DNA of 64,000 bases, taken from IMG/VR virus record IMGVR_UViG_3300048121_001678, positions 233,165 to 297,164 of that record; one strand, 5' to 3'. The translations under genes were made by a program, and so were the position numbers. Under the pieces are notes generated by a model. That model was not told the DNA's origin. It saw only the letters and a program-made list of their open reading frames with translations, and made no database searches. Numbering within the stretch: the first letter of the stretch is position 1; each line of letters starts with the position of its first letter. Of this stretch, positions 6,248 through 39,360 are shown piece after piece.

Positions 6248-6248
6248 A

Positions 6249-24923: not shown

Positions 24924-24946
24924 AAAAATAATATTAAATTAGCGTT

Positions 24947-25102
24947 ATGGAAAACAAAAGTAAGAATAAGAGACCAAAGTGGGTTGGGGACCCTTTAAAT
25001 GACTCTGATGTTGGTTATGATTCAGAATGGGAACCAAACATACCGATGGGTAGTCCAGGTCCAAGAGAACCAATTAAGACAGACAAGGAAGAAGAATTAT
25101 AA
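24947..25102 (+). CDS. 51 aa Pro/Asp-rich micro-ORF (not in the ORF track)
   Basis: MENKSKNKRPKWVGDPLND..KEEEL*; fills the intergenic gap. Confidence 0.45.
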   Translation: MENKSKNKRPKWVGDPLNDSDVGYDSEWEPNIPMGSPGPREPIKTDKEEEL

Positions 25103-25114
25103 AATCGTTAAAAC

Positions 25115-25690
25115 ATGAAATTATTTAGTTACAATAAAAATTCTTTAGAATATAATAAAGTGAGAGTACTACCATATATGTTACTTTTTATTATTTTAAT
25201 ATTACTAAGCTATATGTATGGTTTTTTAGAGGGTAGAGAAGATAAAATTATAAAACTCACACCTCAAGAAAAAGAATTAATCTTAATTAATGTACAAGAC
25301 ACATCATTAACATTTAGTGAGGAAAAACTAATTTCACTAATGAATGAATTAAATATTAAGTTTCCTCATATAGTGTTAGCTCAGGCGAAAGTCGAGAGTG
25401 GTAATTATACTTCTAAAATTTTTAGAGAAAACCATAACCTATTTGGCATGAAGGAGGCTCGTGTAAGAATTCACACAGCACAGGGAACACAATTTAACCA
25501 TGCCTATTATAATACATGGAGGGAATCTGTGTATGATTACGCATTCTATCAATGTAGATACCTGTCTAATATTAACACTGAAGACGAATATCTAAGTTAT
25601 TTAGGTCAATCATACGCAGAGGCAACTAATTATGTGTCTATATTGAAAACAATGATAAAGAGAGAAAAACTAAGAGAAAAGTTTAACTAA
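25115..25690 (+). CDS. Glucosaminidase/muramidase (FlgJ-like GH73) with N-terminal TM anchor
   Basis: LAQAKVESG..NHNLFGMK; YA.A..Y. Confidence 0.8.
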   Translation: MKLFSYNKNSLEYNKVRVLPYMLLFIILILLSYMYGFLEGREDKIIKLTPQEKELILINVQDTSLTFSEEKLISLMNELNIKFPHIVLAQAKVESGNYTSKIFRENHNLFGMKEARVRIHTAQGTQFNHAYYNTWRESVYDYAFYQCRYLSNINTEDEYLSYLGQSYAEATNYVSILKTMIKREKLREKFN

Positions 25691-27357
25691 TGGTAATAAT
25701 AGGTTTATCGCATGGTCATGATGCAGGTGCAACACTTTTTAAAGATGGTGAAATTATAGTATCAATATCAGATGAGAGGTTGACTAGAACAAAAAAAAAT
25801 TACGGATTTTTTAGTAATGTGATTGCAACTAAATCAATTGATTATTGTTTGGAGTACTCTAATTTGTCCATTGATGATGTGGATTATATTTTTTTTAACA
25901 CCACAAACCCAAAACCCGATGTGTTATATTGTTTAAAATATTATTATAATATTGATAGTAATAAAATAATATATGTGACACATCATTTATCACACGCAGC
26001 ATCATCTGTTTTCACTTCAGAATTTGAAGATGTTGTTATAGTGGTTTCTGATGCATTAGGTGAGGACCCCATTTATGGGGACTATGGTTGGAGGTCATTT
26101 GAAGAAAAGGGTTTTAATTTAGTTGAACACGAAGATATAGAAAGTAGTTTCGGTGAGGGGTGGTCTATATACCATTATAAAAATGGTGAGTTTTTTAATT
26201 TAGAAAAAAAATGGGTAGATAGTAATGGTCAGTTTAAACAACTAAAAGATTGTTCGATAGGTTACCTATATGAATGTGGGACAGAACAATTAGTTGGTGG
26301 TATAACTATTGGTAGTGCTGGTAAATTAATGGGATTAGCATCATTCGCGGATAAAGATTGGGTTTCAAAACAAGAAAGAAATCACAAAATTATTTATGAT
26401 AATTTATCTATCAAAGGTGAATTATTTTATCCTGAAATTAATCATAATAGTCCATTTCAAATAAAGTCAAACGTTGCGGGGTTATACCAAAGAGAACAGG
26501 AGGAATGTTCTCATTTTTTAGTTGAGAAATCTAAAAAATTAAGTAATAGTAATAATATTACAGTTGCAGGTGGTTCATTTTTAAATTGTACAACAAACAG
26601 TAATATTGTGAAATCCAACTTATTTGAATCTCACCATTTTTTCGCATCGTCTGACGACTCAGGAATATCTTTAGGGTGTGCTTTATACGGGGCATATACT
26701 ATGAGTAGTGTTAATCGTAAAAAATTCTTTAGTCCTTATTTAGGTAGAGAATATAGTAGAGAAGAAATTTTAAATGAATTAGAAAAACACAATTATTTAA
26801 ATTACAATGAAATAACCGATTTTACACAATTAACAGATATAGTCACTAACCAAATAATAGATAATAAAATTATTGGTTGGTTCCAAGGTAGAAGTGAAAT
26901 AGGTCCAAGAGCGTTAGGTAATAGAAGTATATTGGCAAACGCATCGACTCCATGGATTTCTGACTATATTAATGGCGAGATTAAAAAAAGAGAATGGTAC
27001 AGACCATTTGCACCTTCAGTATTATATGAGTATCAGTCTGAAATATTTGATTTGGATTATTTTTCACCTTATATGTTACTAACCGCTGAAGTAAATACCG
27101 AATGGAGAAACAAAATACCATCAGTAACACATATAGATAATACCTCAAGATACCAATCAGTAACTAAAGATACTAACGAAAGGTTTTATGATTTGATAAG
27201 TGAGTTTAATAATAAGACAGGTATACCTCTACTCTTAAATACTAGTTTTAACGGACCAACAGAACCAATAGTTGAGTCACCAAAAGACGCTATAAATACA
27301 TTCTTAGAGGTGGGTTTAGATATTTTAGTAATTAATGATTTTGTAATTACAAGATAA
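25690..27357 (+). CDS. Second carbamoyltransferase (NodU/CmcH family)
   Basis: GHDAGA, HHLSHA, GKLMGLASF, GRSEIGPRALGNRS, REWYRPFAP, NTSFN. Confidence 0.93.
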   Translation: MVIIGLSHGHDAGATLFKDGEIIVSISDERLTRTKKNYGFFSNVIATKSIDYCLEYSNLSIDDVDYIFFNTTNPKPDVLYCLKYYYNIDSNKIIYVTHHLSHAASSVFTSEFEDVVIVVSDALGEDPIYGDYGWRSFEEKGFNLVEHEDIESSFGEGWSIYHYKNGEFFNLEKKWVDSNGQFKQLKDCSIGYLYECGTEQLVGGITIGSAGKLMGLASFADKDWVSKQERNHKIIYDNLSIKGELFYPEINHNSPFQIKSNVAGLYQREQEECSHFLVEKSKKLSNSNNITVAGGSFLNCTTNSNIVKSNLFESHHFFASSDDSGISLGCALYGAYTMSSVNRKKFFSPYLGREYSREEILNELEKHNYLNYNEITDFTQLTDIVTNQIIDNKIIGWFQGRSEIGPRALGNRSILANASTPWISDYINGEIKKREWYRPFAPSVLYEYQSEIFDLDYFSPYMLLTAEVNTEWRNKIPSVTHIDNTSRYQSVTKDTNERFYDLISEFNNKTGIPLLLNTSFNGPTEPIVESPKDAINTFLEVGLDILVINDFVITR

Positions 27358-27374
27358 ATTATTATATTTGTCCT

Positions 27375-27749
27375 ATGACAACGAGAGAATGGACTAAAAT
27401 ATTAAAAACAAATCCTGCGATTTCACAAATTAAACTTAAGGGTGAATTTGTTAAGGGTACTATTACCATTACTCGTCATAGAATTATTGAAACAGAACAG
27501 AGAAACTATTCCTTTAACGAAGAATTCAAATCTAAGTCCTATATTATTAGAAATAGCGAAATTGATATAACCTTCGAGGGTTCAGTAAAATCTTCTATGA
27601 ATAATTGGCACCTTCCTAAAACATATAATAAACGACAGTTAAACAACTGGTTCAGGGCAAGTAAGGAAATTAACGGAGAACTTAAAATGAGATTGAAACT
27701 CATAGGAGGTTCATCAGAATATAAAATAAAGAAAATCACATGTCTGTAG
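27375..27749 (+). CDS. Hypothetical protein
   Basis: TATATTTG at 27363-27370; paralog of 14165..14551. Confidence 0.65.
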   Translation: MTTREWTKILKTNPAISQIKLKGEFVKGTITITRHRIIETEQRNYSFNEEFKSKSYIIRNSEIDITFEGSVKSSMNNWHLPKTYNKRQLNNWFRASKEINGELKMRLKLIGGSSEYKIKKITCL

Positions 27750-28237
27750 TAAAAAGATTTTTCAGAAGAGTAAAAAGAGTTATTGATTTCCTTCCGATGA
27801 TTTGGAAAGGTTTTGATTTTGACTACCGTTATGGTATTGAGTTGTTTCAATACCAACTCAAACGAACTGCAGATTTCATGGAGTCTGACGGAGCAGTGAC
27901 AATGAATGCAAACATTAGAGCAAAACGAATTCGCACCGCAGTTGAACTTCTTCAAAAGGTTTATGATGAGGAATACGGTTGTGAATACCAAGACAAACTC
28001 AAACAGATTTATGGTGAGAAGGTTTTGGATTGGGAGTTTATCGAACTGGATGAAAAAAGTGATTACGATGGTGAACCTCTTTACGAACTCAAATGGGAAT
28101 ATGAAAAATGGGACAACGCTGAAGAGGTGAAAGAAGCCAAACAAAAACTTTATGAAGAGTCTCAAGAAAAACAAAAACGAGCCGAAGAGTTGGTTTGGAA
28201 ATTTATTTCACACAATATTCGTGGTTGGTGGGATTAA
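27740..28237 (+). CDS. Hypothetical phage protein
   Basis: 165 aa; IWK.FDFDY..LVWKFI..IRGWWD. Confidence 0.7.
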   Translation: MSVVKRFFRRVKRVIDFLPMIWKGFDFDYRYGIELFQYQLKRTADFMESDGAVTMNANIRAKRIRTAVELLQKVYDEEYGCEYQDKLKQIYGEKVLDWEFIELDEKSDYDGEPLYELKWEYEKWDNAEEVKEAKQKLYEESQEKQKRAEELVWKFISHNIRGWWD

Positions 28238-28274
28238 TTAAGAAATTATGTTTATCTTTGAAAAAAATAACAAG

Positions 28275-28964
28275 ATGAAAATCACATTCATATCGGATAC
28301 GCACACAAAACATCATCAGGTAACCTCACAGTTGCCAGGTGGTGATTTGTTGGTTCATGCTGGTGACTTTTCTTCACGAGGTTATGAACATGAGGTGGAT
28401 GGATTTTTTGATTGGTTCAATAAGTTGGATAACTACACCAATAAGATTGTCATCGCTGGTAACCACGACCTTATGTTTGAGGACGACCCAATGTTAGCTA
28501 AAGACATCATGAGTTACTATCCTAACGTTACTTACCTTCAGGATGACATCGAAGTCATCGGTGAGGATTACTCATCGTCAGTAAAAGTTTATGGTTCTCC
28601 GTGGCAACCTGAGTTTTATAATTGGGCATTTAACCTACCACGCAACGGTGAGGAGTTAAAGGAGAAGTGGAATGAGATTCCACATAACATGGACATCGTG
28701 GTTACTCATGGACCCGCATATGGTCATTTGGACACCGTTGTGGGACAATCTATGAACCTGGGGTGTGAGTTGTTGGCTGAACGGTTAAAGGTCGTTAAAC
28801 CGAAGATACACGTGTGTGGACACATCCACAGTGGGTATGGTTATAAGTTCCATGAAGGGACACATTACTTCAACGCTGCGGTACTCGGTGAGGATTATGT
28901 ATTCACTCAGAAACCGATGACGGTGGAGTGGGACCCAAAAACTAACGAAATAGAATTTGTTTAA
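28275..28964 (+). CDS. Metallophosphoesterase (calcineurin-like)
   Basis: ISDTH, HAGDFS, AGNHD, THGP, GHIH. Confidence 0.92.
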   Translation: MKITFISDTHTKHHQVTSQLPGGDLLVHAGDFSSRGYEHEVDGFFDWFNKLDNYTNKIVIAGNHDLMFEDDPMLAKDIMSYYPNVTYLQDDIEVIGEDYSSSVKVYGSPWQPEFYNWAFNLPRNGEELKEKWNEIPHNMDIVVTHGPAYGHLDTVVGQSMNLGCELLAERLKVVKPKIHVCGHIHSGYGYKFHEGTHYFNAAVLGEDYVFTQKPMTVEWDPKTNEIEFV

Positions 28965-29002
28965 TCAAATTTTTTTATTACATTTGTAAAAAATAAACAA
29001 TA

Positions 29003-29626
29003 ATGAAGTATAAATTGGAAATGTATGGGTGGGAAGTCGAAGCGACAGGTCACTCTTTAACGGACGAACAAGTTAAATTAATTGAAGAGTTAATGGACAC
29101 CAACGGTGCTGATGAACTATGGGAAGTTCGTCACGATATAGAACTTGAAGGTATTGTTGACGACCTTTATAACCCTGACCTTTATCATATGTCACGTGGT
29201 TTAGATAACAGTGGTCTGTGGTTCTCACTTAAAGATGAAGATGATAACGAAGTTTTAAGTTTTGAACTGTCTGACATGGAAGATATCTACGAAGTGTTAG
29301 GTGATTCCGCAGATGACATCCCTTATGAAGGTTATTTATCAATACCTGGTGAAGGTAAGAATGAAAACGTTGATAATATACTTGCAATATTTGACGAAAA
29401 CAAAGGTGGTATTTGTGATTTTGAAATGTTCGAATCAGATGAAGTACCAACGGCAAAAGATTTCTGTGTCCAACACGGAGATATAGGTACACCTGATGGT
29501 GATTGGGATTTTATCTCCAAAGTATTTTATAAAGGAAAAGAGTTAGATGTGTACGACCATTTAGATAATCGTGGTAAGGCGGCAACTGTTGAAATATACC
29601 GTAAAGATGGTACAACAATTAGTTGA
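29003..29626 (+). CDS. Acidic hypothetical protein
   Basis: 207 aa; TACATTTG at 28979-28986. Confidence 0.7.
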   Translation: MKYKLEMYGWEVEATGHSLTDEQVKLIEELMDTNGADELWEVRHDIELEGIVDDLYNPDLYHMSRGLDNSGLWFSLKDEDDNEVLSFELSDMEDIYEVLGDSADDIPYEGYLSIPGEGKNENVDNILAIFDENKGGICDFEMFESDEVPTAKDFCVQHGDIGTPDGDWDFISKVFYKGKELDVYDHLDNRGKAATVEIYRKDGTTIS

Positions 29627-29885
29627 TGGTGATGTATTAGAGGAAGGTCCGAAGGTTAAAAAGATACACATTAACCAACACCATATTCGGTCCAATAAGA
29701 CGAAGGAAACGGACCTTCCTGTAATCACCATTAAGATTGGTAGTAAAAACTACTACTGTAATGAAATAGAAATAAACGGTCCATCGAAACTATCTTACTG
29801 TGGGAGTGGTGACCAAAAACCCTTAATCAGTTGTGGGGCGAGAGTAATCTTGGAAACGACTGCTGAAGTAAAAATTATAAGATAA
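29607..29885 (+). CDS. Hypothetical phage protein
   Basis: IHINQHHIRSN..PVITIK..SCGARV; start uncertain. Confidence 0.65.
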   Translation: MVQQLVDGDVLEEGPKVKKIHINQHHIRSNKTKETDLPVITIKIGSKNYYCNEIEINGPSKLSYCGSGDQKPLISCGARVILETTAEVKIIR

Positions 29886-30094
29886 TGAATGAATTCTTTA
29901 ATAGCTATAAAGTATTAAAAGGTACATTACTTAGAACATTAGTTTACACATTGGGGCATTTCCTAATTGCAGCTGCTTGTGTAATGTATTTTACAGGTGC
30001 AGATTTTATTAGTTCAGTTACTGATGCTGTGGTAGAGCCAATTATCAATGGAGTTTGGTTTTTTATTTTAGATAGACTTTGGACAAAAAATTAA
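29885..30094 (+). CDS. DUF2061-like small membrane protein
   Basis: LLRTLVYTLGHFLIA..EPIING.WFFILDRLW. Confidence 0.7.
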   Translation: MNEFFNSYKVLKGTLLRTLVYTLGHFLIAAACVMYFTGADFISSVTDAVVEPIINGVWFFILDRLWTKN

Positions 30095-30393
30095 TTAGTA
30101 TATATAATATGTTAGATTTTAAAAATGGAATAATTTTAAACAACTTAAAAATAATGAGATTTTTAAGTTCTCTTGGTATTTTGCTTATATTTGTAACTCA
30201 ATGTAGTGTTGATAAGAACGTCACCGTGAATACTAAGACTGTTGACTTATCTGAATTGGATAGTGTTGATTGTGTACTATGGTGGGAAGTTCAGAACGAT
30301 ACCTTAAAGGTTTGGACTAAGGAAGATGAAAGACGAGCCGATATTGAGAGATATAATTACATTCGTTCATTAGACACAACAGGATGGGAATAA
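30079..30393 (+). CDS. Putative lipoprotein or membrane protein (start probably downstream)
   Basis: Hydrophobic stretch ending in TQ-C. Confidence 0.5.
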   Translation: MDKKLISIYNMLDFKNGIILNNLKIMRFLSSLGILLIFVTQCSVDKNVTVNTKTVDLSELDSVDCVLWWEVQNDTLKVWTKEDERRADIERYNYIRSLDTTGWE

Positions 30394-30394
30394 G

Positions 30395-30511
30395 ATGAAA
30401 GAGAAAGTATTAAAATATAACAACGACTGGAAAGGTCGTAGAATATACGAAGAGAATAAAAAGAAAGAGTTGGTCAATAAGACTAAAACCTTTAACACCA
30501 AAGAGAGATGA
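30395..30511 (+). CDS. Cassette micro-ORF ending FNTKER
   Basis: 38 aa MKEKVLKYNNDWKGRR..TFNTKER*. Confidence 0.55.
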   Translation: MKEKVLKYNNDWKGRRIYEENKKKELVNKTKTFNTKER

Positions 30512-30639
30512 GTGATAAAAATAAAGAAACAGAGATGTTAAGAGCTTCATTAATGAAGAAAGTTAGTGAACTAAATGATAATGAAATTATATCTTTATAT
30601 GATGACTTATCTGAATTCTTTAACACCAAAGAGAGATGA
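30508..30639 (+). CDS. Cassette micro-ORF (43 aa), copy 1
   Basis: MSDKNKETEMLRASLMKKVSELNDNEIISLYDDLSEFFNTKER*. Confidence 0.7.
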   Translation: MSDKNKETEMLRASLMKKVSELNDNEIISLYDDLSEFFNTKER

Positions 30640-30767
30640 AAAGATATTGGAATAAATTCCTCAACTTCATATTACCAAATAGAAGAGAGAGGTTACTTAT
30701 TGAAATAATGAAACGAGACCAAGATTTGGGTCTCTATGATGAAACCTTTAACACCAAAGAGAAATGA
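30636..30767 (+). CDS. Cassette micro-ORF (43 aa)
   Basis: MKRYWNKFLNFILPNRRERLLIEIMKRDQDLGLYDETFNTKEK*. Confidence 0.65.
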   Translation: MKRYWNKFLNFILPNRRERLLIEIMKRDQDLGLYDETFNTKEK

Positions 30768-31045
30768 GTGAAGTAAATCCAAATTACAATCCACAAGCAG
30801 ATTTTGACAACTTTGGTGAAGAGATGGAACACATCGTTAAGACAACACCTAAAGAGGTGCTAAAAAAGGAGTGGGATAAAGTATTAGCAGAATATGGTAC
30901 TGATACACACGACAAGATTCTATCTATGACTGATGACTTTGTTCAGTCTAATCGTAGTGAAGGACAAACCTATGCTCATTATCACTATGATATGATGGCA
31001 GACTTTGCTCTACATATATTAGAAACCTTTAACACCAAAGAATGA
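30764..31045 (+). CDS. Cassette ORF (93 aa)
   Basis: Ends ETFNTKE*. Confidence 0.7.
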   Translation: MSEVNPNYNPQADFDNFGEEMEHIVKTTPKEVLKKEWDKVLAEYGTDTHDKILSMTDDFVQSNRSEGQTYAHYHYDMMADFALHILETFNTKE

Positions 31046-31098
31046 TAGTCAAAGTGTTTTGATTATCACATATTGAGAAATTTTAACACCAAAGAGAG

Positions 31099-31230
31099 AT
31101 GAGTGATACAAATAAAGAAACAGAGTTGTTAAGAGCTTCATTAATGAAGAGAGTTAGTGAACTAAGTGATAATGAGATTATATCTTTATATGATGACTTA
31201 TCTGAATTCTTAAACACCGAAGAGAAATGA
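31099..31230 (+). CDS. Cassette micro-ORF (43 aa), copy 2 of 30508..30639
   Basis: MSDTNKETELLRASLMKRVSELSDNEIISLYDDLSEFLNTEEK*. Confidence 0.7.
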   Translation: MSDTNKETELLRASLMKRVSELSDNEIISLYDDLSEFLNTEEK

Positions 31231-31484
31231 ACGAAGTAGAAATCTTTATCAACCGTCTCAAGAAAATTGGTATTGAGCTTGAGTTAATGGGTAATCTACC
31301 TTGGATTTACTTACACAAAGTAGATGGTAATAGGGTACAACCTGAAGATTATAATGCTAATCACGGTTACACTATTGCTTGGTACCCTGTTAGAGTGGAC
31401 CAAAAGATACATCTTGATAGTAATTTGAAACGAACCTTTGAAGTAATTAGAAAATACAAATCCTTTAACACCAAAGAGAAATGA
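31227..31484 (+). CDS. Cassette ORF (85 aa)
   Basis: Ends KSFNTKEK*. Confidence 0.7.
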   Translation: MNEVEIFINRLKKIGIELELMGNLPWIYLHKVDGNRVQPEDYNANHGYTIAWYPVRVDQKIHLDSNLKRTFEVIRKYKSFNTKEK

Positions 31485-31630
31485 AACTAAAAGTCAGAGG
31501 AGAAAAATATGATGTATACGGTCAGTTCTACATCATTCCAACCATCAAAGTAACCCACGACAAATTACTATATGGATATTATACCATAGATTTAGTTTGG
31601 GGAAAATGGGGTGTTTCAATTTGCTTTTAG
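31481..31630 (+). CDS. 49 aa micro-ORF after the last repeat
   Basis: MKLKVRGEKYDVYGQFYIIPTIK..WGKWGVSICF*. Confidence 0.55.
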   Translation: MKLKVRGEKYDVYGQFYIIPTIKVTHDKLLYGYYTIDLVWGKWGVSICF

Positions 31631-31649
31631 TCTCTTTACGGCTCACAAA

Positions 31650-31679
31650 TGTCAAGTATATTGCACAAAATACTTGACA
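31650..31679. promoter_or_regulatory. Perfect 10-bp inverted repeat, possible operator
   Basis: tgtcaagtat-N10-atacttgaca upstream of the 31768 operon. Confidence 0.45.
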
Positions 31680-31767
31680 AATGAGATACAATGTTCAACA
31701 AAATTATTTGACTTATAATATTATTTAGACTACACTATGTTTAAGTATTAAATTAAAAAGATTAAAC

Positions 31768-31953
31768 ATGGAAAACTTATTAAACAAACTTTCAGAATTC
31801 ACTAACAAATGGTATCCTATCATTCTTGCATTCATCTGTCTATTATACTCAGTTGGATTAGGACTATTAGGTCACACTAACGAGGCAGCATATTCTGCAC
31901 ACTGGCCAGGAACAATTTTATTATTCGCAATCGCAATCAGACAAAGACGTTAA
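31768..31953 (+). CDS. Small 2-TM membrane protein
   Basis: WYPIILAFICLLYSVGLGL..YSAHWPGTILLF. Confidence 0.65.
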   Translation: MENLLNKLSEFTNKWYPIILAFICLLYSVGLGLLGHTNEAAYSAHWPGTILLFAIAIRQRR

Positions 31954-31955
31954 TT

Positions 31956-32177
31956 ATGAGCACAGGATTTTTCATAGTAGGAGCAGTTATTTTCTCAATC
32001 TATATGTATTTCACCATATGGAACATTAATAGAGGTGCAAAAGCACAACAGGAAGAAAACGAAAGAAAAGAATTACAAAGAAGATATTCAGAGAATTCAA
32101 TGGTTGATTACGATGGTATGGGTAATTTCAGTAGAATGCCAATTTCAAGACCCAAAAAGAAATCTAAGGTATTATGA
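31956..32177 (+). CDS. Small membrane-anchored protein
   Basis: N-terminal TM; VDYDGMGNFSR. Confidence 0.6.
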   Translation: MSTGFFIVGAVIFSIYMYFTIWNINRGAKAQQEENERKELQRRYSENSMVDYDGMGNFSRMPISRPKKKSKVL

Positions 32178-32749
32178 AACATCTGATAGTTGTCGGCCAC
32201 CCAAATAAGGAATCCTTTTGTCATAATGGAATTTATAAAACCATTGTAGATACATTAAAAAGTAATAATCAGGACTATACGACCATCGACTTATATGAGG
32301 ACAAACTCCATAGAAATAAATTGGACCTTATCAAATATTATCAGGATAAAGTAAAAGAGTCCACTCACATTTATTTTATCTCACCAGTATGGTGGTTTAG
32401 AATGGTTCCGAAGATGGAGACATTCTTTGATGAGGTTTTTACACCAGGATTTGCATATAAGTTTGTCCCTATCATTGGAAAGTATGCGTACCCTAAACCA
32501 TTTTTAAAAGATAAGAAGGTAAGAACATACATTACCCACGGAGCACCTATGTTACCGGTAGTTACATTATATCTTAACTCTGTAAAGTTAAGATTGGTGA
32601 TGGGTGTTTATACATTTGTATTTGGATGGAAACCTTCACGATGGTTAAAGACAAAACAATTTTGGTCTGTACCTTTTGTCACCGATGAAAAGAGAAAAAA
32701 ATATCTACGTGTCGTAGAGAAAGACATTAAAAGAGACCTTAAATGTTAA
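32174..32749 (+). CDS. NAD(P)H-dependent oxidoreductase (flavodoxin-2, KefF/NQO-like)
   Basis: LIVVGHP..SFC, PVWWFR.VP..FFDEVF..GFAY. Confidence 0.88.
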   Translation: MKHLIVVGHPNKESFCHNGIYKTIVDTLKSNNQDYTTIDLYEDKLHRNKLDLIKYYQDKVKESTHIYFISPVWWFRMVPKMETFFDEVFTPGFAYKFVPIIGKYAYPKPFLKDKKVRTYITHGAPMLPVVTLYLNSVKLRLVMGVYTFVFGWKPSRWLKTKQFWSVPFVTDEKRKKYLRVVEKDIKRDLKC

Positions 32750-33159
32750 CAATACCTGAATACGATAAAATCCAAGCATATGAAAACTCTTACCATATTG
32801 CTGTAGACTTTGATGGTGTAATATGTGAAAGTACCAAAGGATTCCATGACGGTACAGCATATGGAGAACCAATTAAGGACACTATTGACTCCATTAAAGA
32901 ACTATATAATAAGGGATTTACTTTGGTAGTATTCACAGGTAAGGTTAAAAAAGACCGACCAAATATAGGTGGTAAAACAGGTTTAGAAATTGTTGAAGAG
33001 TGGTTAGTAAAATACGACTTACTCAAATACTTCAAAGAGATTACTAGCGACAAACCAAGAGCACTTATTTATATTGACGACAATGGTTATCGTTTTGATA
33101 ACTGGAAAAACACATTAAAATTCATTGATAATATATCAAATACAGAAAAAAATAATTAA
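32743..33159 (+). CDS. HAD-like phosphatase
   Basis: IAVDFDGVI, FTG, KP.ALIYIDD. Confidence 0.8.
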   Translation: MLTIPEYDKIQAYENSYHIAVDFDGVICESTKGFHDGTAYGEPIKDTIDSIKELYNKGFTLVVFTGKVKKDRPNIGGKTGLEIVEEWLVKYDLLKYFKEITSDKPRALIYIDDNGYRFDNWKNTLKFIDNISNTEKNN

Positions 33160-33161
33160 TT

Positions 33162-33518
33162 ATGAAAGAAAATGAGATGTACTCCCTTTTAGAAATACAG
33201 TACTTAAAGGGAAGACTAGATGAATTACATAAAGCAATACCTACCATCACTAACATGGACCGTAGTCGTAAGTTAGATGTTAGACTTCAAAAATATTACG
33301 AAAAACTTAAGTCTGTTTCTGAATTAGCCTATCACCTATACCAAGTGGAGAGACAAAACCAGATGATATCTAAAGATAAAAACAAAAAGTTGATGAACCA
33401 ATTACTGTTAGAAGTATCAACAGTACTGACCTCAGTATCAATAAATACACCAACTGTCGATGAGTATGATATTACAGAACTATTAGACAGAATTAAAAAA
33501 CAAATAGAAAAATACTAA
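33162..33518 (+). CDS. Hypothetical helical protein
   Basis: 118 aa ORF. Confidence 0.65.
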   Translation: MKENEMYSLLEIQYLKGRLDELHKAIPTITNMDRSRKLDVRLQKYYEKLKSVSELAYHLYQVERQNQMISKDKNKKLMNQLLLEVSTVLTSVSINTPTVDEYDITELLDRIKKQIEKY

Positions 33519-33527
33519 ATAAAAGTT

Positions 33528-33695
33528 ATGTTCGGACTATTCAAAAAGAAAACAAAAGAAGAAATACTTCAAAAAAAATACGATAAATTAATTGACGAAT
33601 CATATAAATTATCCACAATCAATAGAGCTAAAAGTGATGAAAAAGCTTTTGAAGCCAATGAAGTTTTAAAACAAATAGATAATTTAACAGAATAA
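33528..33695 (+). CDS. 55 aa protein resembling the flavobacterial Lacal_2735 family (not in the ORF track)
   Basis: MFGLFKKKT..LQKKY..LS..NRAKSD.K..EA..VLKQI; family recalled from memory. Confidence 0.7.
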   Translation: MFGLFKKKTKEEILQKKYDKLIDESYKLSTINRAKSDEKAFEANEVLKQIDNLTE

Positions 33696-33721
33696 TTGTT
33701 GTTAGTTTAAATTTTTTAACT

Positions 33722-33759
33722 TACATTTGTTGTGTTGAAAGACAAAAAGTTATTTGAAA
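33722..33759 (+). promoter_or_regulatory. Host-type promoter and boxA-like element for the tRNA operon
   Basis: TACATTTG (33722-33729), GTTATTTGAAA (33749-33759). Confidence 0.55.
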
Positions 33760-33818
33760 TGTCGGAAAGAATTTAGTACCGATGCCGCTGTGGTGGAATT
33801 GGTAGACACGAGGGACTT

Positions 33819-34490
33819 AAATAGTTACCACGTATGACTTTTCTATACTTTGATACTATTTATAGTTATGAAAGTAACAGATGAAGAGATAATAGAAGCA
33901 TGTGAGTCTGAATTGACTATGTCACGTGCAGCAAGTAAACTAAAGATTCACTTTAACACACTTAAGAGGAGGGCAGTTTTACTTGGAGTTTATAAACCTA
34001 ACCAATCAGGTAAAGGAACTAATAAACGACACAATGGTAGTAAATTACCTTTGAATGAGATTTTAAAAGGTTTACATCCACATTATCAAACTAATAAGTT
34101 ACGACATAGACTTATAAAAGAAGGTATCAAAGAAGAAAAGTGTGAAGTCTGTGGAATCACTGAATGGTTAGGTAAAAAATTAAGTTTTGAATTAGACCAT
34201 ATTGACGGTGATAGAACTAATCATAGATTAGAAAATATTAGAATAATATGTCCTAATTGTCATTCACAGACAGAAACATACCGAGGTAAAAACACTTGAG
34301 TGCACGAAGAGAAATCTTTGATGTAGAACCTCTCAAATTCGGGGAAACCTGTAAAATGGCAATCCCGAGCGAAGCCCGAAAGGGAACGTGTAGAGACTTA
34401 ACGGGAGGGACCCTAACGTGAAGACGAGGGTTAAGAGAAAGTCCAGACCACAAACATCATATGATGGCAACGAAAGTTGTAGTTGGTACG
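33819..34490 (+). mobile_element. Group I intron (cyanobacterial/plastid tRNA-Leu IC3-like) with an HNH ORF in L1
   Basis: Insertion after U34, terminal G; IGS GAGU at 34298-34301; P3 CCUCUC/GGGAGG; P4 UUCGGG/CCCGAG; R GUGUAGAGACUUAA; P8 CCCUAACGUGAAGACGAGGG; S AAGAGAAAGUCC. Confidence 0.9.
33868..34299 (+). CDS. Intron-encoded HNH homing endonuclease
   Basis: N-terminal HTH-like; CEVCG..ELDHIDGD..N..LENIR.ICPNCHSQT; stop codon overlaps the IGS; own TATTTAT at 33857-33863. Confidence 0.88.
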   Translation: MKVTDEEIIEACESELTMSRAASKLKIHFNTLKRRAVLLGVYKPNQSGKGTNKRHNGSKLPLNEILKGLHPHYQTNKLRHRLIKEGIKEEKCEVCGITEWLGKKLSFELDHIDGDRTNHRLENIRIICPNCHSQTETYRGKNT

Positions 34491-34611
34491 AAAATCCCTT
34501 GGACAGTAATGTCCGTGGCGGTTCGAGCCCGCCCAGCGGTACGATAGATAGGGAGTTATCCAATACTAGTTGGAACTAGATAACTTTAAAAAAGAACCCT
34601 ATCTTTTACAT

Positions 34612-34685
34612 GCACCCATAGCTCAGCTGGATAGAGCATCTGCCTTCTAAGCAGACGGTCTCAGGTTCGAATCCTGATGGGTGTA
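34612..34685 (+). tRNA. trnR: tRNA-Arg(UCU)
   Basis: GCACCCA/TGGGTGT acceptor; TCTGC-CTTCTAA-GCAGA; no encoded CCA. Confidence 0.93.
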
Positions 34686-34720
34686 CTGGTGAACACAACT
34701 TAGTTGTAAGTAACCTAAAC

Positions 34721-34794
34721 GGACTTTTAGCTCAGTTGGTTAGAGCACCTGACTCATAATCAGTAGGTCGATGGTTCGAGCCCATCAAGGTCCA
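34721..34794 (+). tRNA. tRNA with CAU anticodon (Ile2-like or elongator Met)
   Basis: GGACTTT/AAGGTCC acceptor; loop CTCATAA. Confidence 0.88.
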
Positions 34795-34964
34795 CGTTGT
34801 TGTATTAAATAAAAATAACCAATATCTTTATATTACAGAAAATGTAATGTATATTTGTACTACGAGAGAGAGACAGTAAAGCTGATTAAATTGAGATTAT
34901 GGTAAAGGTTAACCACTCATTCACGCAGTAACCTTGAAAGACCCGAAAACCTCTCTCTTTTAAA

Positions 34965-35037
34965 GCCTTAATAGCTCAGTTGGTAGAGCAGCACATTTGT
35001 AATGTGCGGGTCGGCGGTTCGAGTCCGTCTTGAGGCT
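34965..35037 (+). tRNA. trnT: tRNA-Thr(UGU)
   Basis: GCCTTAA/TTGAGGC; GCACA-TTTGTAA-TGTGC. Confidence 0.92.
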
Positions 35038-35114
35038 CATTAACTGAAACATACCGTTCCTTAAATACGGGTAACGGAAGACCAGGTAGAGAACATTAAG
35101 TAATCTACCAAATA

Positions 35115-35199
35115 GGAAGATTGACAGAGTGGTCGATTGTACTGGTCTTGAAAACCAGCGTACCGAAAGGTACCGTAGGTTCGAATCCTACATCTTCCG
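35115..35199 (+). tRNA. trnS: tRNA-Ser(UGA)
   Basis: GGAAGAT/ATCTTCC; CTGGT-CTTGAAA-ACCAG; long variable arm. Confidence 0.93.
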
Positions 35200-35205
35200 C
35201 AACAA

Positions 35206-35288
35206 TGGGGAGTTGAGCAATTGGTTGGCTCGACAGACTGTAAATCTGTTCCTTTTTAGGCTTGGGGGTTCGAGTCCCTCCTCCCCAA
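35206..35288 (+). tRNA. trnY: tRNA-Tyr(GUA)
   Basis: TGGGGAG/CTCCCCA; ACAGA-CTGTAAA-TCTGT; long variable arm. Confidence 0.9.
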
Positions 35289-35290
35289 CG

Positions 35291-35698
35291 AAGTGAGTTC
35301 TTTGACATATTTAAACTTTAACAAATTATGGAAATAACATCATTTATTTTAGGTGTATGTGCGGTCATTGTTCTTATGATGGTCATGGGTACGTTTGTGA
35401 ATTACATGACAACATCGTCCTTGAAAAAGGAAATAAACGGTCTCCAAAAAGAAGTTGAAAATCTTCATAGAGACTTAGAAACCAAAGAACGACAACTCTA
35501 TGATTTTGGTAGTAGTTTGGACCAAAATCTTCGTGATGAATTAGAGAAACTATATCGTCACATAGATAGTCGAGTAGACAAACTTGAAAATGGGGTATCC
35601 CAACAGATTGCTGACATTTACCGTCAGCTAGATAAATTAGAAAACGAAGGAGAGTCCGTTATTAACGGGTAATCCATAAAACGTTAAAGAACTCACTT
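35291..35698 (+). repeat. 16-bp inverted repeat (boxA-like arm) bracketing ORF 35328..35672
   Basis: AAGTGAGTTCTTTGAC (35291-35306) vs GTTAAAGAACTCACTT (35683-35698); the only mismatch is a G.U pair. Confidence 0.75.
35328..35672 (+). CDS. Membrane-anchored coiled-coil protein
   Basis: N-terminal TM then heptad-like helix; terminator at about 35700-35731. Confidence 0.7.
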   Translation: MEITSFILGVCAVIVLMMVMGTFVNYMTTSSLKKEINGLQKEVENLHRDLETKERQLYDFGSSLDQNLRDELEKLYRHIDSRVDKLENGVSQQIADIYRQLDKLENEGESVING

Positions 35699-35763
35699 AA
35701 AAACCCCTTCAGAAATGTTGGGGTTTTTTTTATTATTAATGAAAAAAGTTTTATATTTGTATT

Positions 35764-35961
35764 ATGGAAAAATTGAATACATGTAAAGAATGTCCGTGGG
35801 TAGTTAGAAATAACCATAATAACACCATTGTTAATTTTTCTAAAAGGATGGATAAATCACATAACTGTCATATGATTAATGGTGGTAAAGACCTTTGGAA
35901 TGCGACTGAGAGTACAAAGTGTAATGGGAGAAAACATTATGAATCTTTGGTTTCGTCGTAA
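35764..35961 (+). CDS. Small Cys/His protein
   Basis: CKECPW..H.CH..C; TATATTTG at 35752-35759. Confidence 0.6.
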   Translation: MEKLNTCKECPWVVRNNHNNTIVNFSKRMDKSHNCHMINGGKDLWNATESTKCNGRKHYESLVSS

Positions 35962-36063
35962 ATGCTGGATAAACCCATCATTAACCACGTTTTTAACCCT
36001 TAATGATGGTTTTTCCATACATTTATAACACACTTAAATTATTAACCATAGAAGAATTAGACA

Positions 36064-36285
36064 ATGAGTGAAGATAAAGAATATTTTAAAAAAGGTGTTG
36101 AATATTATTTTAAGTTCAATAATGATGACCCGATTAAGTTTGCAGAATCAACTGAAGACTTATCTGATATGGAGTCGATTGAAAGAAGTACTCTTAAGAT
36201 GGAGGTTGGTCCGTGGGATGGTAGTGAAATTAGTTGGAAGATTGGAATGAAAAAGTTTAAGATTTATTCGAAAGAGAAGGAATAA
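36064..36285 (+). CDS. Hypothetical protein
   Basis: 73 aa ORF. Confidence 0.55.
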   Translation: MSEDKEYFKKGVEYYFKFNNDDPIKFAESTEDLSDMESIERSTLKMEVGPWDGSEISWKIGMKKFKIYSKEKE

Positions 36286-36319
36286 TTTCGTATATTTGTA
36301 TTGTTAAACAGATAAAGAT

Positions 36320-36652
36320 ATGGCAAGAGAAAAATTATGGCGTAATGTAAGTGGTGAGTATAACTATCAATTCAATTGGATTGATGAGAACGGTAGTACC
36401 TGTGGATTCAATGATGTATGGGCACCTAACAAGCGTGAAGCGGTTAAAAGAGCAAAGAAAATGGAGACTAAGGCTCATTGGTCTCTTTGGGATGAGGACA
36501 AACGTGAATACGTTACTGTACCTAACAAAGTAGAAGGTAAAGGTCATTGCTTTCGTATGAAGGGTATATATGTTGATACTAAGTCAATGTATAAGGCGAC
36601 TTTTAAACAGGCGGATGATATGAATCGTTTAGGTTGGATGATGACGATATAA
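36320..36652 (+). CDS. Hypothetical protein
   Basis: TATATTTG at 36291-36298. Confidence 0.65.
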   Translation: MAREKLWRNVSGEYNYQFNWIDENGSTCGFNDVWAPNKREAVKRAKKMETKAHWSLWDEDKREYVTVPNKVEGKGHCFRMKGIYVDTKSMYKATFKQADDMNRLGWMMTI

Positions 36653-36666
36653 TTAGAATAGTAAAT

Positions 36667-36900
36667 ATGAAAGCAACAATAGAATTTGATTTACACGACC
36701 CTGAAGATAAAAGGGAACACCAACGTATGTTAAAGAGCATGGATATGCATCTTGCTCTATGGGACATCTCTCAAGAGATACGTTCTAAAATTAAGTACGA
36801 ATCTGACTCAATGAGTGAAGACGAGTACAAAGCGTGGGGACAAGCACAAGAAATGTTCTACCGTATTATCAACGATTACACAATAGATTTAGAATTATAA
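36667..36900 (+). CDS. Hypothetical phage protein
   Basis: MKATIEFDL.DPED; start refined. Confidence 0.65.
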   Translation: MKATIEFDLHDPEDKREHQRMLKSMDMHLALWDISQEIRSKIKYESDSMSEDEYKAWGQAQEMFYRIINDYTIDLEL

Positions 36901-37073
36901 TGGCATACGTAGTATTAAAACACTCATCCGACAGTAAACATACTGTCATCGTAAACGACTCTGAAGGTATTGCAATGGAATTTGATACACATGAACAGGC
37001 ACAAGCAGTTGCCGAACTGTTCCAAGCAAACACAACACACGGTTCAAAATACGAAGTAAAGAAACTATCATGA
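36900..37073 (+). CDS. Small hypothetical protein
   Basis: Start refined to MAYVVLK; coupled on both sides. Confidence 0.6.
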   Translation: MAYVVLKHSSDSKHTVIVNDSEGIAMEFDTHEQAQAVAELFQANTTHGSKYEVKKLS

Positions 37074-37444
37074 AATTAGCACTAATAGCACACGACGGAA
37101 AAAAGTCAGATATGGTCGCATTCGTTATGAAGAGATTAAAATTCTTCAATAGAGCAGATGTTAACATTGTTACCACAGGAACAACAGGTAAGAAGATATT
37201 ACACGCTGGTGTTGATAAGGTTGAGGCAGTGGCATCTGGACCTTTGGGTGGTGATGCCGAGATTGGTGCCATGGTTACACGTGGAGAAATTGATGGGGTG
37301 TTCTTTTTTAGAGACCCGTTAGATAAACACCCACATGAACCTGATGTTCAAATGTTAATGAGATTATGTGATGTCCATGATATTCCATTAGCAACAAATT
37401 ATAAAAGTGGACATATAATGGTTAAATATTTTGAAAGAAAATGA
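37070..37444 (+). CDS. mgsA: Methylglyoxal synthase
   Basis: LALIAHD.KK, TTGTTG, SGPLGGD.EIG, FRDPL..HPHEPDV..L.RLCDV. Confidence 0.95.
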   Translation: MKLALIAHDGKKSDMVAFVMKRLKFFNRADVNIVTTGTTGKKILHAGVDKVEAVASGPLGGDAEIGAMVTRGEIDGVFFFRDPLDKHPHEPDVQMLMRLCDVHDIPLATNYKSGHIMVKYFERK

Positions 37445-37722
37445 CACACAATTGTTTAATATGTGATAAAATCGCAGATAGAAAAGTAACGACATCTCTT
37501 AATCAGGGAGAATTATATCTTTGTTCAAGTAAAAAGTGTAAGACAATGTTAAAGAATCGTTTAACTGAAAATATAGAAAAAATTGAAGACGACCCTATGG
37601 ATTTTCAAGGTAAGTCACCTAAACAATATGAATCAAGTGGTAAAGCAATGATTTGGTCATTTACTTTAATTGTTATTGTGGTGATAATTTATGGTATATA
37701 TAAATTATCGACAAACTATTAA
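37441..37722 (+). CDS. Zn-ribbon protein with C-terminal TM
   Basis: CLIC..LCSSKKC; hydrophobic C-terminus. Confidence 0.6.
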   Translation: MTHNCLICDKIADRKVTTSLNQGELYLCSSKKCKTMLKNRLTENIEKIEDDPMDFQGKSPKQYESSGKAMIWSFTLIVIVVIIYGIYKLSTNY

Positions 37723-37736
37723 TAAGACAAAAAAAA

Positions 37737-38297
37737 ATGAAGAGAACGATAATAATAAATCTATTTGGTGGTCCTGGCTCGGGTAAGTCTACGGTTGCCT
37801 CAGGATTATTTTACACGTTTAAGAGTAAAGGACTAACATGTGATAACCCTTATGAGTTCCCAAAACAAGTGGCGTGGGAGGATAATAAATCACAAATATC
37901 TGACCAACTTTATATATTCGCTAATCAACATAGAGGAATTGTTCGTTCTTATGGTAAAGTAAACTACATTATTTTAGATTCTCCGTTATTATTATCTTTG
38001 GTTTATAAAAATGGATATACAGGTGACTATCCCGCCAAGTTTTATAATGATAGTTTTGATTCCATGGTTTTGGAACTATTTAAGAGTTATGAAAATATCA
38101 ACATATTTTTAGATAGAGCAGATAGACAATTTCAACAGGAAGGTAGATTTCAATCTGAAGAAGAATCTGAAGAAGTTGATAAAAAAATAAAAATGATAAT
38201 GGATGAAAATGATATTCCTTATCATAGCGTCAAAGTAGGTGATAACGAAATAAGACGTATTATAGAAATTATAAGAAATGAAAAAGAAAGCAATTAA
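37737..38297 (+). CDS. P-loop kinase (NadR/AAA_28-like)
   Basis: INLFGGPGSGKST, ILDSPL, GRFQSEEES. Confidence 0.8.
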   Translation: MKRTIIINLFGGPGSGKSTVASGLFYTFKSKGLTCDNPYEFPKQVAWEDNKSQISDQLYIFANQHRGIVRSYGKVNYIILDSPLLLSLVYKNGYTGDYPAKFYNDSFDSMVLELFKSYENINIFLDRADRQFQQEGRFQSEEESEEVDKKIKMIMDENDIPYHSVKVGDNEIRRIIEIIRNEKESN

Positions 38298-38667: not shown

Positions 38668-38715
38668 TTTACCTAAGACTTAATTAAATTATATTTATTC
38701 AGTAAACAACTCAAT

Positions 38716-39315: not shown

Positions 39316-39360
39316 TATAAGAGGTTTGGTTTTCCAAACCTTTTTTTTTACCTTTGTTTT

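What the first reader, a model, noticed from the sequence alone, without database searches (positions are those of the whole stretch)
30395..31630. Integron-like micro-gene cassette array joined by a 22-bp repeat that supplies stop and start codons
Seen: seven copies of TTTAACACCAAAGAGARATGA with periods 128, 128, 281, 54, 128 and 254 bp. Each encodes FNTKE(R/K)* at the end of one ORF while its ATGA starts the next, so any inserted unit is automatically translationally coupled. One cassette occurs twice in diverged form (30508 and 31099), and one is a 54-bp remnant without a valid ORF. Three units are exactly 128 bp although two of them are unrelated in sequence. Inference: a recombination-driven system for acquiring and shuffling micro-proteins, such as anti-defence or host-takeover factors. 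No recombinase is visible in the window.
Basis: partly seen in the sequence, partly recalled or inferred. Interest (0 to 1): 0.75.

Follow-up and report, generated by a model that had tools for sequence, protein, structure and literature searches.

The report
Shared start-linker that shuffles phage micro-genes
A marine jumbo phage of Bacteroidota carries seven tiny genes joined by a 21-base stop/start linker, and the same linker sits in front of over a hundred small-gene families in many other phages, where it marks the exact points at which those genes are swapped.

Summary
Window 30491-31484 holds seven copies of TTTAACACCAAAGAGARATGA: five exact, one with 2 mismatches, one truncated. They join ORFs of 38, 43, 43, 93, 43, 85 and 49 aa, and the motif occurs nowhere else in the 297-kb genome.

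The motif is a nucleotide element, not a peptide tag. The exact 21-mer is in more than 120 IMG/VR contigs of diverse Flavobacteriia-type phages, always 17 nt before the ATG of a small ORF (median 57 aa). It often follows stop codons, a tRNA or a terminator hairpin.

It occupies the ribosome-binding slot. Homologous junctions in other phages carry GGAGG there, and the motif partly fits the known Shine-Dalgarno-less initiation rules of Bacteroidia. It also holds a stop codon in two reading frames.

Homology between contigs breaks exactly at its edges. About 90% of gene pairs that share one flank have an unrelated other flank. One 93-aa cassette is 100% identical in four contigs with unrelated flanks.

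No integrase, attC-like hairpin, promoter or terminator was found. The phage does encode a UvsX-like recombinase.

Best reading: a stereotyped translation-initiation and coupling linker that also serves as a short homology patch for modular gene exchange. It works like PeSLs and mycobacteriophage start-associated sequences and is not an integron. Cassette functions remain unknown.

The parts
30395..30511 (+). ORF1, 38 aa. It starts without the motif and ends FNTKER* inside motif copy 1. This is the left edge of the array.
30491..30511 (+). Motif copy 1, exact (R=G).
30508..30639 (+). ORF2, 43 aa (MSDKNKE...). Homologues at 94% nt identity in L135/L136 and 84% in L062.
30619..30639 (+). Motif copy 2, exact (R=G).
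30636..30767 (+). ORF3, 43 aa (MKRYWN...). The homologue in L007 is 81% identical in nt with pS 0.77 and pN/pS 0.19, and it has different neighbours there.
30747..30767 (+). Motif copy 3, exact (R=A).
30764..31045 (+). ORF4, 93 aa. It is 100% nt-identical in L063/L137, L138 and L140, whose flanks are unrelated or about 73% identical.
31028..31045 (+). Motif copy 4, truncated by a 3-nt (GAG) deletion relative to the intact copy behind the same gene in relatives.
31042..31081 (+). Remnant spacer with only a 6-codon ORF (31042-31062). No homologue was found in the fetched loci.
31082..31102 (+). Motif copy 5, exact (R=G).
31099..31230 (+). ORF5, 43 aa, a diverged paralogue of ORF2.
31210..31230 (+). 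Motif copy 6, with 2 mismatches (TTAAACACCGAAGAGAAATGA).
31227..31484 (+). ORF6, 85 aa, phrog_38683 (function unknown). The model is an alpha/beta fold at pLDDT 80.5, and the motif-encoded tail is disordered.
31464..31484 (+). Motif copy 7, exact (R=A).
31481..31630 (+). ORF7, 49 aa. It starts at the last motif and ends without one. This is the right edge of the array.
28947..28986 (+). Candidate Bacteroidetes-type promoter (TTTG ... TACATTTG) in the gap before ORF 29003. It is the nearest such pattern in an intergenic gap upstream of the array (one TAnnTTTG at 30186 lies inside an ORF), and none lies within the array. This is a pattern match only.

Best explanation
The locus is a hyperplastic array of small accessory genes in a ~297-kb marine jumbo phage whose host is most likely a member of the Bacteroidota. 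The genes are joined by a stereotyped junction, RAAACC-TTTAACACCAAAGAGARATGA-AA.

(1) On the mRNA the junction is a portable translation-initiation leader for a host that does not use Shine-Dalgarno pairing. It is A-rich and unstructured, with A at -14, -13, -11 and -6, and the ATG at a fixed distance. It also ends the upstream reading frame in two of three frames: TAA in frame with the next ATG, and TGA overlapping it. Ribosomes therefore terminate within 15 nt of the next start and can re-initiate, and any gene placed between two junctions is expressed.

(2) On the DNA the same 21-28 nt are identical in front of more than 100 unrelated small-gene families in many phages. They therefore act as a short homology patch where homologous recombination swaps, inserts, duplicates and deletes cassettes. 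The likely enzymes are the UvsX-like recombinase here and the RecE-type exonuclease with RusA in the smaller carriers.

Shown: nucleotide-level conservation, fixed position before small ORFs, occupancy of the RBS slot, homology breaks exactly at the motif, and identical cassettes in unrelated contexts. Inferred: that the motif drives translation and coupling, and that exchange is by homologous rather than site-specific recombination.
For: Nucleotide element, not peptide:
- Only 62 of 153 copies have more than 30 open codons upstream in the FNTKE frame. Copies also follow a tRNA 3' end, terminator hairpins and stop codons.
- By genome codon usage the chance of spelling FNTKE this way is 0.0044 per copy (ACC is 9% of Thr codons).
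- Synonymous sites AAA>AAG and GAG>GAA hardly vary, while C6>A (Asn>Lys) is common.
- The encoded tail is disordered in the model.

Translation leader:
- All 153 copies are followed by an ATG ORF (median 57 aa, maximum 188). Control frames stay open for 0-9 codons.
- Homologues of the 85-aa gene fetched by protein similarity carry either the motif or a GGAGG-N5-7-ATGA linker in the same slot, sometimes after the same YYNETF tail.
- The phage's own genes are SD-depleted (5% against 12% inside genes) with A enriched at -14 to -10. This matches the Flavobacterium johnsoniae rules in PMC6847099.
- The carriers' primase is closest to Flavobacterium, Nonlabens, Polaribacter and Cellulophaga phages.
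- 85% of spacings place the upstream stop inside the next motif.
- No promoter-like box lies inside the array, and there is no consistent structure.

Exchange junction:
- 63 of 70 downstream-homologous pairs have unrelated upstream sequence, and 75 of 82 the reverse.
- Identity falls from ~97% to ~25% exactly at the motif edges.
- The 93-aa cassette is 100% identical in four contigs with random-level flanks.
- Internal motif variants are unlinked to either flank.
- 18 exact junctions recur in independent samples, so the mosaic is not assembly chimerism.
- Contig ends lie within 130 nt of a motif 33 times against 4.1 expected.
- Cassette depth is 10-50 times that of the flanks in seawater runs.

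Genes and enzymes:
- The genes are real: pooled pN/pS is 0.23.
- Recombination enzymes: UvsX-like recombinase plus SSB in this genome; PDDEXK exonuclease in 40 carrier loci and RusA in 18.
Against: - No experiment or transcript map shows that the motif drives translation. It has G rather than the favoured A at -3, and it differs from the phage's usual TAAAAA-type leaders.
- A 21-nt near-invariant sequence is more than any known SD-less leader needs, so a sequence-specific factor (protein, RNA or nuclease) may be involved.
- Much of the motif statistics comes from loci found by searching for the exact motif. In the protein-based sample only about half of the homologues keep a recognisable motif.
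- The test of whether GGAGG-linker phages use SD generally was inconclusive.
- Recombination at 21-28 nt is short for efficient homologous exchange.
- No structural variant of this particular array was demonstrated. The 'joints' rest on the motif alone.
Confidence: 0.68

Rival explanations
1. Integron-like system: the 21-mer is a recombination site cut and rejoined by a dedicated site-specific recombinase that captures and reorders cassettes.
For: Cassette content and order vary between relatives, with breakpoints at the repeat. The cassettes lack their own promoter-like boxes. Arrays of up to 15 cassettes exist.
Against: The ~99%-complete genome has no tyrosine (PF00589) or serine (PF00239) recombinase. 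None is among the recurrent neighbours in 120 carrier loci. The repeat is asymmetric, only 21 nt long and has no attC-type hairpin. Internal variants are unlinked to both flanks, so there is no single crossover point. The position is locked to the start codon.
Confidence: 0.05
2. Transcription-level element: each motif is a promoter for a phage-modified or phage-encoded RNA polymerase giving leaderless or very short-leader mRNAs, or it is an operator for a DNA-binding regulator of early genes.
For: Its length and near-invariance resemble phage-specific promoters or operators. The distance to the ATG is fixed. It stands alone after terminators and a tRNA. It is confined to a block of small non-structural genes.
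Against: It does not resemble sigma-70 or Bacteroidetes -33/-7 boxes. It occurs in very different phages (TerL 31-89% and exonuclease median 33% identity) that are unlikely to share one special polymerase. SD linkers replace it in homologous junctions, which points to translation. In 85% of junctions it is used as the upstream stop.
Confidence: 0.12
3. Translational operator or nuclease target: the motif is bound on RNA or DNA by a dedicated factor, such as a RegA-like repressor, an endoribonuclease, or a homing HNH endonuclease whose cut stimulates gene conversion. That recognition, not leader strength, keeps it invariant.
For: Conservation exceeds what an SD-less leader needs. HNH endonuclease genes occur as a cassette (L096) and 2.2 kb downstream of the array (33850-34299). 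This is analogous to the open question left for mycobacteriophage SAS (PMC3203893).
Against: No candidate factor co-occurs consistently. There is no antisense partner in the genome and no 16S complementarity beyond chance. The spread across unrelated phages would require a host factor or a co-transferred gene.
Confidence: 0.12
4. Protein-level signal: FNTKE(R/K) is a conserved C-terminal peptide (sorting, degradation or interaction tag), and the DNA identity is secondary.
For: Seven ORFs in the window and a family ending ...YYNETFNTKEK share the tail.
Against: Over half of the copies have no upstream ORF in that frame. Codon spelling is identical against the genome's usage. Variation is not synonymous-biased in the way coding predicts. 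A third of cassettes stop at the TAA in another frame. The tail is disordered.
Confidence: 0.02

Closest known systems
Start-associated sequences (SAS) of Cluster K mycobacteriophages (Pope et al. 2011, PMC3203893)
   Same: Both are short asymmetric repeats in one orientation, a few nt before start codons and in the RBS slot. Both are restricted to non-structural genes of many different families. Upstream stop codons are sometimes inside the repeat. Both are virtually absent from host genomes and more conserved than ribosome binding requires.
   Different: SAS is 13 bp, contains an AGGAG Shine-Dalgarno core, is dispersed (11-19 copies per genome) and is confined to one phage cluster. The present motif is 21-28 nt, has no SD, includes the ATG and an overlapping TGA, and is packed into tandem arrays. 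It is shared by very diverse phages, including jumbo phages, and is shown here to be the breakpoint of gene exchange.
PeSL (promoter-early stem-loop) cassettes of T4-type phages (Arbiol et al. 2010, PMC2839356; Comeau et al. 2014, PMC4122927)
   Same: Both are conserved regulatory repeats lying between small ORFan genes in hyperplastic regions and ending at the start codon of the next gene. Recombination between copies causes insertions, deletions and replacements between relatives. A T4-type (UvsX-like) recombinase is present here.
   Different: A PeSL is a composite of a sigma-70 early promoter and a stem-loop terminator plus SD. The present repeat has none of these. It acts, as inferred, at translation within a polycistronic message. 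Mini-circles were not tested.
Integron gene cassettes (attC / IntI)
   Same: Both are arrays of promoterless small cassettes of unrelated content separated by a recurring site, with content that varies between relatives.
   Different: Here there is no integrase, no attI and no attC hairpin. The site is a translation leader, and exchange looks homologous rather than site-specific.
Overlapping stop-start (ATGA) translational coupling, and termination-reinitiation signals such as calicivirus TURBS (from general knowledge)
   Same: The stop of gene n overlaps or closely precedes the start of gene n+1, with a conserved upstream sequence.
   Different: TURBS works by pairing with 18S rRNA. No 16S complementarity beyond chance was found here. 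The motif also functions where no upstream ORF exists.

Membership tests
Integron | IntI-type tyrosine recombinase encoded next to the array | tested here: not met
   PF00589 gave no match in the ~99%-complete 297-kb genome although the controls were positive. No serine recombinase either. None among the recurrent neighbours in carrier loci.
Integron | attC sites: imperfect inverted repeats (about 57-141 bp) that fold into a hairpin | tested here: not met
   The repeat is 21 nt and asymmetric. Folds of the six junctions show no consistent structure, with z-scores from -2.0 to +1.4. No inverted repeat coincides with the copies.
Integron | Cassette content and order vary between related genomes | tested here: met
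PeSL (T4-type phages) | Sigma-70-like early promoter inside the repeat | tested here: not met
   No promoter-like site coincides with the repeats. No Bacteroidetes -7 box lies within the array.
PeSL (T4-type phages) | Stem-loop terminator/attenuator inside the repeat | tested here: not met
PeSL (T4-type phages) | Lies upstream of ORFans in hyperplastic regions and marks indel/replacement breakpoints between relatives | tested here: met
PeSL (T4-type phages) | Recombination between nearby copies yields mini-circles | not testable with these tools
   This needs outward PCR or long reads. The contig 'joints' rest on the motif alone.
Start-associated sequence (SAS) | Short asymmetric repeat, one orientation, immediately upstream of start codons (RBS slot) | tested here: met
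   All 153 copies are 17 nt before an ATG ORF. SD linkers occupy the same slot in homologous junctions.
Start-associated sequence (SAS) | Associated with non-structural genes of many different families; virtually absent from host genomes | tested here: met
   102 families among 209 downstream genes. The neighbours are replication and recombination genes. Only 10 stretches matched in 185,579 prokaryote genomes, all MAG or SAG contigs.
Start-associated sequence (SAS) | Consensus GGGATAGGAGCCC with an SD core, in Cluster K mycobacteriophages | tested here: not met
   The sequence is different, there is no SD, and the hosts are Bacteroidota-type. It is an analogue, not a member.

The most novel reading that the evidence does not exclude
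The motif is an evolved 'plug-and-play' adaptor that maintains a communal pool of over 100 micro-gene families among otherwise unrelated marine Bacteroidota phages, from ~40-kb phages to jumbo phages. In one 21-28-nt unit it provides frame-tolerant termination, SD-independent (re)initiation and a recombination handle. Its near-invariance would be enforced by a dedicated, still unidentified trans-acting factor such as an RNA-binding protein or nuclease. That would make it a gene-exchange system distinct from integrons, PeSLs and SAS.
Probability: 0.25. Interest if true: 0.85.

Novelty: new variant of a known kind. Interest (0 to 1): 0.64.

Why it matters
- It gives a concrete, sequence-defined handle on two open problems: how phages of Shine-Dalgarno-blind Bacteroidota get small genes translated, and how the large pool of phage ORFans is exchanged between unrelated phages.
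- The motif works as a search key. One 21-mer retrieves hundreds of small, selected (pN/pS 0.23) but unannotated genes from marine viromes. That is a ready list for anti-defence or host-takeover screens.
- It may be a compact portable translation and coupling element for engineering Flavobacteriia.
- It explains why assemblies of these phages break at such arrays.

Tried and rejected
- DNA similarity of the array and of L007 to cultured phages: none. A 32-nt motif query found no exact copy in 50,697 phage records, only a 22/24 match in Flavobacterium phage FPSV-D35.
- Other TTTAACACC sites in the genome are collagen-like repeats and are unrelated.
- Pairing of the motif with Flavobacteriaceae 16S rRNA is not above shuffled controls in 3 of 4 species, and duplex energy is within 1 sd.
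- Antisense partner in the genome: none.
- Rfam: only sub-threshold noise.
- Hairpin at the repeat: none consistent.
- 'Joints' in laid contigs skip from motif to motif, but the shorter side is 20-27 nt, which is the motif itself. I do not count them as deletion variants.
- The 128-bp spacing as a size rule: not over-represented elsewhere.
- Whether GGAGG-linker phages use SD genome-wide: inconclusive with crude ORF calls.
- Function of the cassette proteins: Pfam, PHROGs, PDB sequence search and the language-model atlas gave nothing beyond phrog_38683, function unknown.
- RecT, Erf and DUF3799 are absent from this genome.
- Literature search for the motif string and for flavobacterial-phage repeats: no prior report.

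Full report
**1. The observation**

Window 30395-31630 holds seven head-to-tail units on the + strand. The repeat TTTAACACCAAAGAGARATGA starts at 30491, 30619, 30747, 31028, 31082, 31210 and 31464, with spacings of 128, 128, 281, 54, 128 and 254 bp. Five copies are exact. The copy at 31210 has two mismatches. The copy at 31028 has lost three bases, and only a 6-codon ORF follows it.

Chance expectation is 0.01 matches per window. The window is bases 233165-297164 of a 297,164-bp virus record that CheckV rates about 99% complete, with 34% G+C. The motif occurs nowhere else in it. Other TTTAACACC sites are collagen-like repeats read from the other strand.

The ORFs are 38, 43, 43, 93, 43, 85 and 49 aa long. 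Six of them end FNTKE(R/K)*, FNTKE* or LNTEEK*, and six start at the ATG of ATGA. The units at 30491 and 31082 are a 150-nt duplication at 95% identity.

**2. The motif is not private to this phage**

- In about 1.04 Mb of those loci there are 168 exact copies, and 45, 32 and 23 copies with 1, 2 and 3 mismatches. The reversed-sequence control gave none.
- The carriers' primase-helicase is closest to those of Flavobacterium, Nonlabens, Polaribacter, Cellulophaga, Maribacter and Tenacibaculum phages.
- The carriers are diverse. Their shared exonuclease has a median of 33% identity, and TerL ranges from 31% to 89%.
- Among 185,579 prokaryote genomes only ten stretches match. All are MAG or SAG contigs, with Bacteroidota labels the most frequent.
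- No cultured phage record has an exact copy.
- In large contigs the copies form one tight cluster.
- Arrays reach 15 genes in L091.

**3. A nucleotide element, not a peptide**

- Only 62 of 153 copies have more than 30 open codons upstream in the FNTKE frame, and 83 have 15 or fewer. Copies follow a tRNA 3' end (L012), terminator hairpins (L019, L050) and stop codons.
- The genome uses ACC for 9% of Thr codons, AAC for 32% of Asn and GAG for 30% of Glu. One FNTKE would therefore be spelled this way with probability 0.0044.
- Among near-matches the variable positions are 1, 2, 6 (C>A, which changes Asn to Lys), 9 and 13. The synonymous changes AAA>AAG and GAG>GAA are rare. The core TAA-M-AC-M-AAAGAGARATGA is almost invariant.
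- In the AlphaFold model of the 85-aa protein (pLDDT 80.5) the motif-encoded tail is disordered.

**4. It sits where a ribosome-binding site sits**

Every copy is followed, from the ATG at motif position 18, by an ORF with a median of 57 aa and a maximum of 188 aa. The two control frames stay open for 0 and 9 codons.

I fetched homologues of two cassettes by protein similarity with the motif-encoded tail removed, which removes most of the ascertainment bias.

- The 93-aa family has the exact motif in 6 of 9 loci, and a related leader in the other three.
- About half of the 85-aa family has the motif or close variants (AACGAG, AACAAG, AAATAG).
- Others have canonical GGAGG-N5-7-ATGA linkers in the same position. 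Twice this follows the same upstream tail ...YYNETF.

The jumbo phage's own genes are depleted in SD-like words (5% upstream against 12% inside genes). They are enriched in A at -14 to -10 and at -3. This is the signature described for Flavobacterium johnsoniae, where adenines at -3, -6, -12 and -13 promote initiation and ribosomes ignore SD (PMC6847099). The motif has A at -14, -13, -11, -8 to -6, -4 and -2, and C or A at -12. However, it has G at -3 and -5, so it is a particular sequence and not the generic leader.

The motif is unstructured, matches no Rfam family and shows no 16S complementarity beyond chance. No sigma-70-like or Bacteroidetes -7 box lies within the array. The nearest candidate promoter in an intergenic gap upstream is at about 28979. 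I therefore infer a polycistronic message with (re)initiation at each junction.

Spacing classes fit this reading:

- 52% of cassettes end at the TGA of ATGA.
- 33% end at the TAA inside TT-TAA-C, which is in frame with the next ATG.
- Only 15% stop before the motif.

**5. It is the breakpoint of gene exchange**

- Of 70 pairs of copies with homologous sequence downstream, 63 have unrelated sequence upstream. Of 82 pairs with homologous upstream sequence, 75 have unrelated downstream sequence.
- When the pairs are anchored on the motif, identity drops from about 97% to the random 25% within 6-12 nt of its 5' edge, or right after its 3' edge.
- L063, from a 212-kb contig of a distant relative, shares the 93-aa cassette at 296/296 nt. 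This stretch is bounded by the motifs, while the syntenic flanking genes are about 73% identical.
- The same cassette is 100% identical in four contigs whose 200-nt flanks are at shuffled-sequence level.
- Several of these contigs are diverged relatives of the jumbo phage and hold the cassette in other positions.
- Linkage of variable positions decays from both sides. Positions -8 to 2 go with the upstream gene, and positions 21 onward go with the downstream gene. Positions 6 and 9 go with neither, and position 17 is only partly linked downstream (0.71 against 0.55 for random pairs). This fits crossovers spread over a homology patch better than one fixed cut.
- The mosaic is not an assembly artefact. 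Eighteen junctions with identical 40-nt flanks on both sides recur in contigs from different samples.
- True contig ends lie within 130 nt of a motif 33 times against 4.1 expected.
- Logan contigs of seawater runs break at the copies. Summed depth over the cassettes is 10-50 times that of the flanks, including in a metatranscriptome. The cassettes therefore also sit in other, more abundant genomes.
- I do not count the 'joints' as deletions, because their shorter side is only the motif.

**6. Enzymes**

The genome has no tyrosine or serine recombinase and no RecT, Erf or DUF3799. It does have a UvsX-like recombinase next to an SSB.

In the smaller carriers the arrays lie in the replication and recombination module. 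They sit beside a RecE/PDDEXK exonuclease (40 loci), a primase-helicase (30), DnaA-type HTH proteins and a RusA resolvase (18).

**7. The cassettes**

The small ORFs are real genes. Pooled pN/pS is 0.23 over 48 pairs, with pS up to 0.8.

The 209 motif-led genes fall into 102 families, of which 64 are singletons. A few of the larger ones are recognisable: an HNH-NUMOD4 endonuclease and a MazG-like pyrophosphatase. None of the seven in the window has a known function. The anti-defence idea remains untested.

**8. Comparison and verdict**

Functionally the closest known things are two.

- The start-associated sequences of Cluster K mycobacteriophages (PMC3203893). These are a conserved asymmetric repeat in the RBS slot of non-structural genes of many families.
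- The PeSL cassettes of T4-type phages (PMC2839356, PMC4122927). These are conserved regulatory repeats at which hyperplastic regions recombine.

The motif is a member of neither family. It has no SD core, promoter or stem-loop, and its sequence and hosts differ. It also fails the defining integron features. I found no prior description.

I rate it a new variant of a known kind: an SD-less start/stop linker, shared across very diverse marine Bacteroidota phages, that also acts as the crossover point for a communal pool of micro-genes. The leader function and the homologous mechanism are inferred, not shown.

Noticed in passing
L153, L164, L168, L170, L172, L180 (about 1490 in each locus): Homologues of the 85-aa cassette in other viral contigs carry GGAGG-N5-7-ATGA linkers in place of the motif, twice after the same upstream tail YYNETF. 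Neighbouring small genes there also use SD...ATGA linkers. This suggests a parallel SD-type linker family and possibly cassette sharing across phages of hosts with different translation systems.
   Followed up: partly
L091:14344-25493 of its contig (array at minus-strand positions 3029-6683 of the locus): An array of 15 consecutive small genes (32-140 aa), each led by the motif or its TTTAAAACC variant. It is the largest array seen.
   Followed up: partly
window 31643-31686: A near-palindrome (21-nt arms, 81% complementary, 2 nt apart) lies in the 137-nt gap immediately after the last array gene. It could be an operator or a terminator.
   Followed up: no
window 33850-34299: An HNH endonuclease gene (PF01844; phrog_10822) lies 2.2 kb downstream of the array. 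An HNH-NUMOD4 endonuclease is also one of the motif-led cassettes in L096.
   Followed up: partly
window 34612-35289 and 1299-1688: A cluster of five tRNA genes (Arg-tct, Met, Thr-tgt, Ser-tga, Tyr). ARAGORN also calls a tmRNA at 1299-1688, which overlaps the end of an ORF and may be a false call.
   Followed up: no
window 23067-27357: Two paralogous Nol-like carbamoyltransferase genes (618 and 555 aa) flank a glucosaminidase-domain gene. Further along the same + strand gene run lie a metallophosphoesterase, a DUF2061 membrane protein and a flavodoxin-fold protein.
   Followed up: partly
G000 26,000-40,500 (outside the window): Long collagen-like Gly-X-Y repeat coding sequences on the minus strand. 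They account for the genome-wide excess of TTTAACACC.
   Followed up: no
L186-L189 (Flavobacteriaceae 16S rRNA 3' ends): The AACACC in the motif is identical to, not complementary to, the 16S 3' tail GGAACACCUCCUUU. A 6-mer match of this kind is expected by chance about 5% of the time.
   Followed up: no
L127, L131, L132, L134, L135, L136: Exact motif copies sit in contigs of MAGs or SAGs labelled Ruminiclostridium, Pseudomonadales, Methanobacteriota, Rickettsiaceae, Alphaproteobacteria and Marinimicrobia. These are probably phage DNA that was mis-binned or co-sorted, so they are unsafe as host evidence.
   Followed up: no
many loci, e.g. L007:1546-1602, L015, L021, L025, L047, L058: A recurrent upstream gene family ends ...(D/E)YYNETFNTKEK. 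It is the largest upstream family (15 copies), and its reading frame runs through the motif.
   Followed up: no
MK764450.1 (Flavobacterium phage FPSV-D35) 15724-15747: This is the only cultured-phage near-match to the motif (22 of 24 nt). It lies within a hypothetical gene of a Flavobacterium psychrophilum phage.
   Followed up: no
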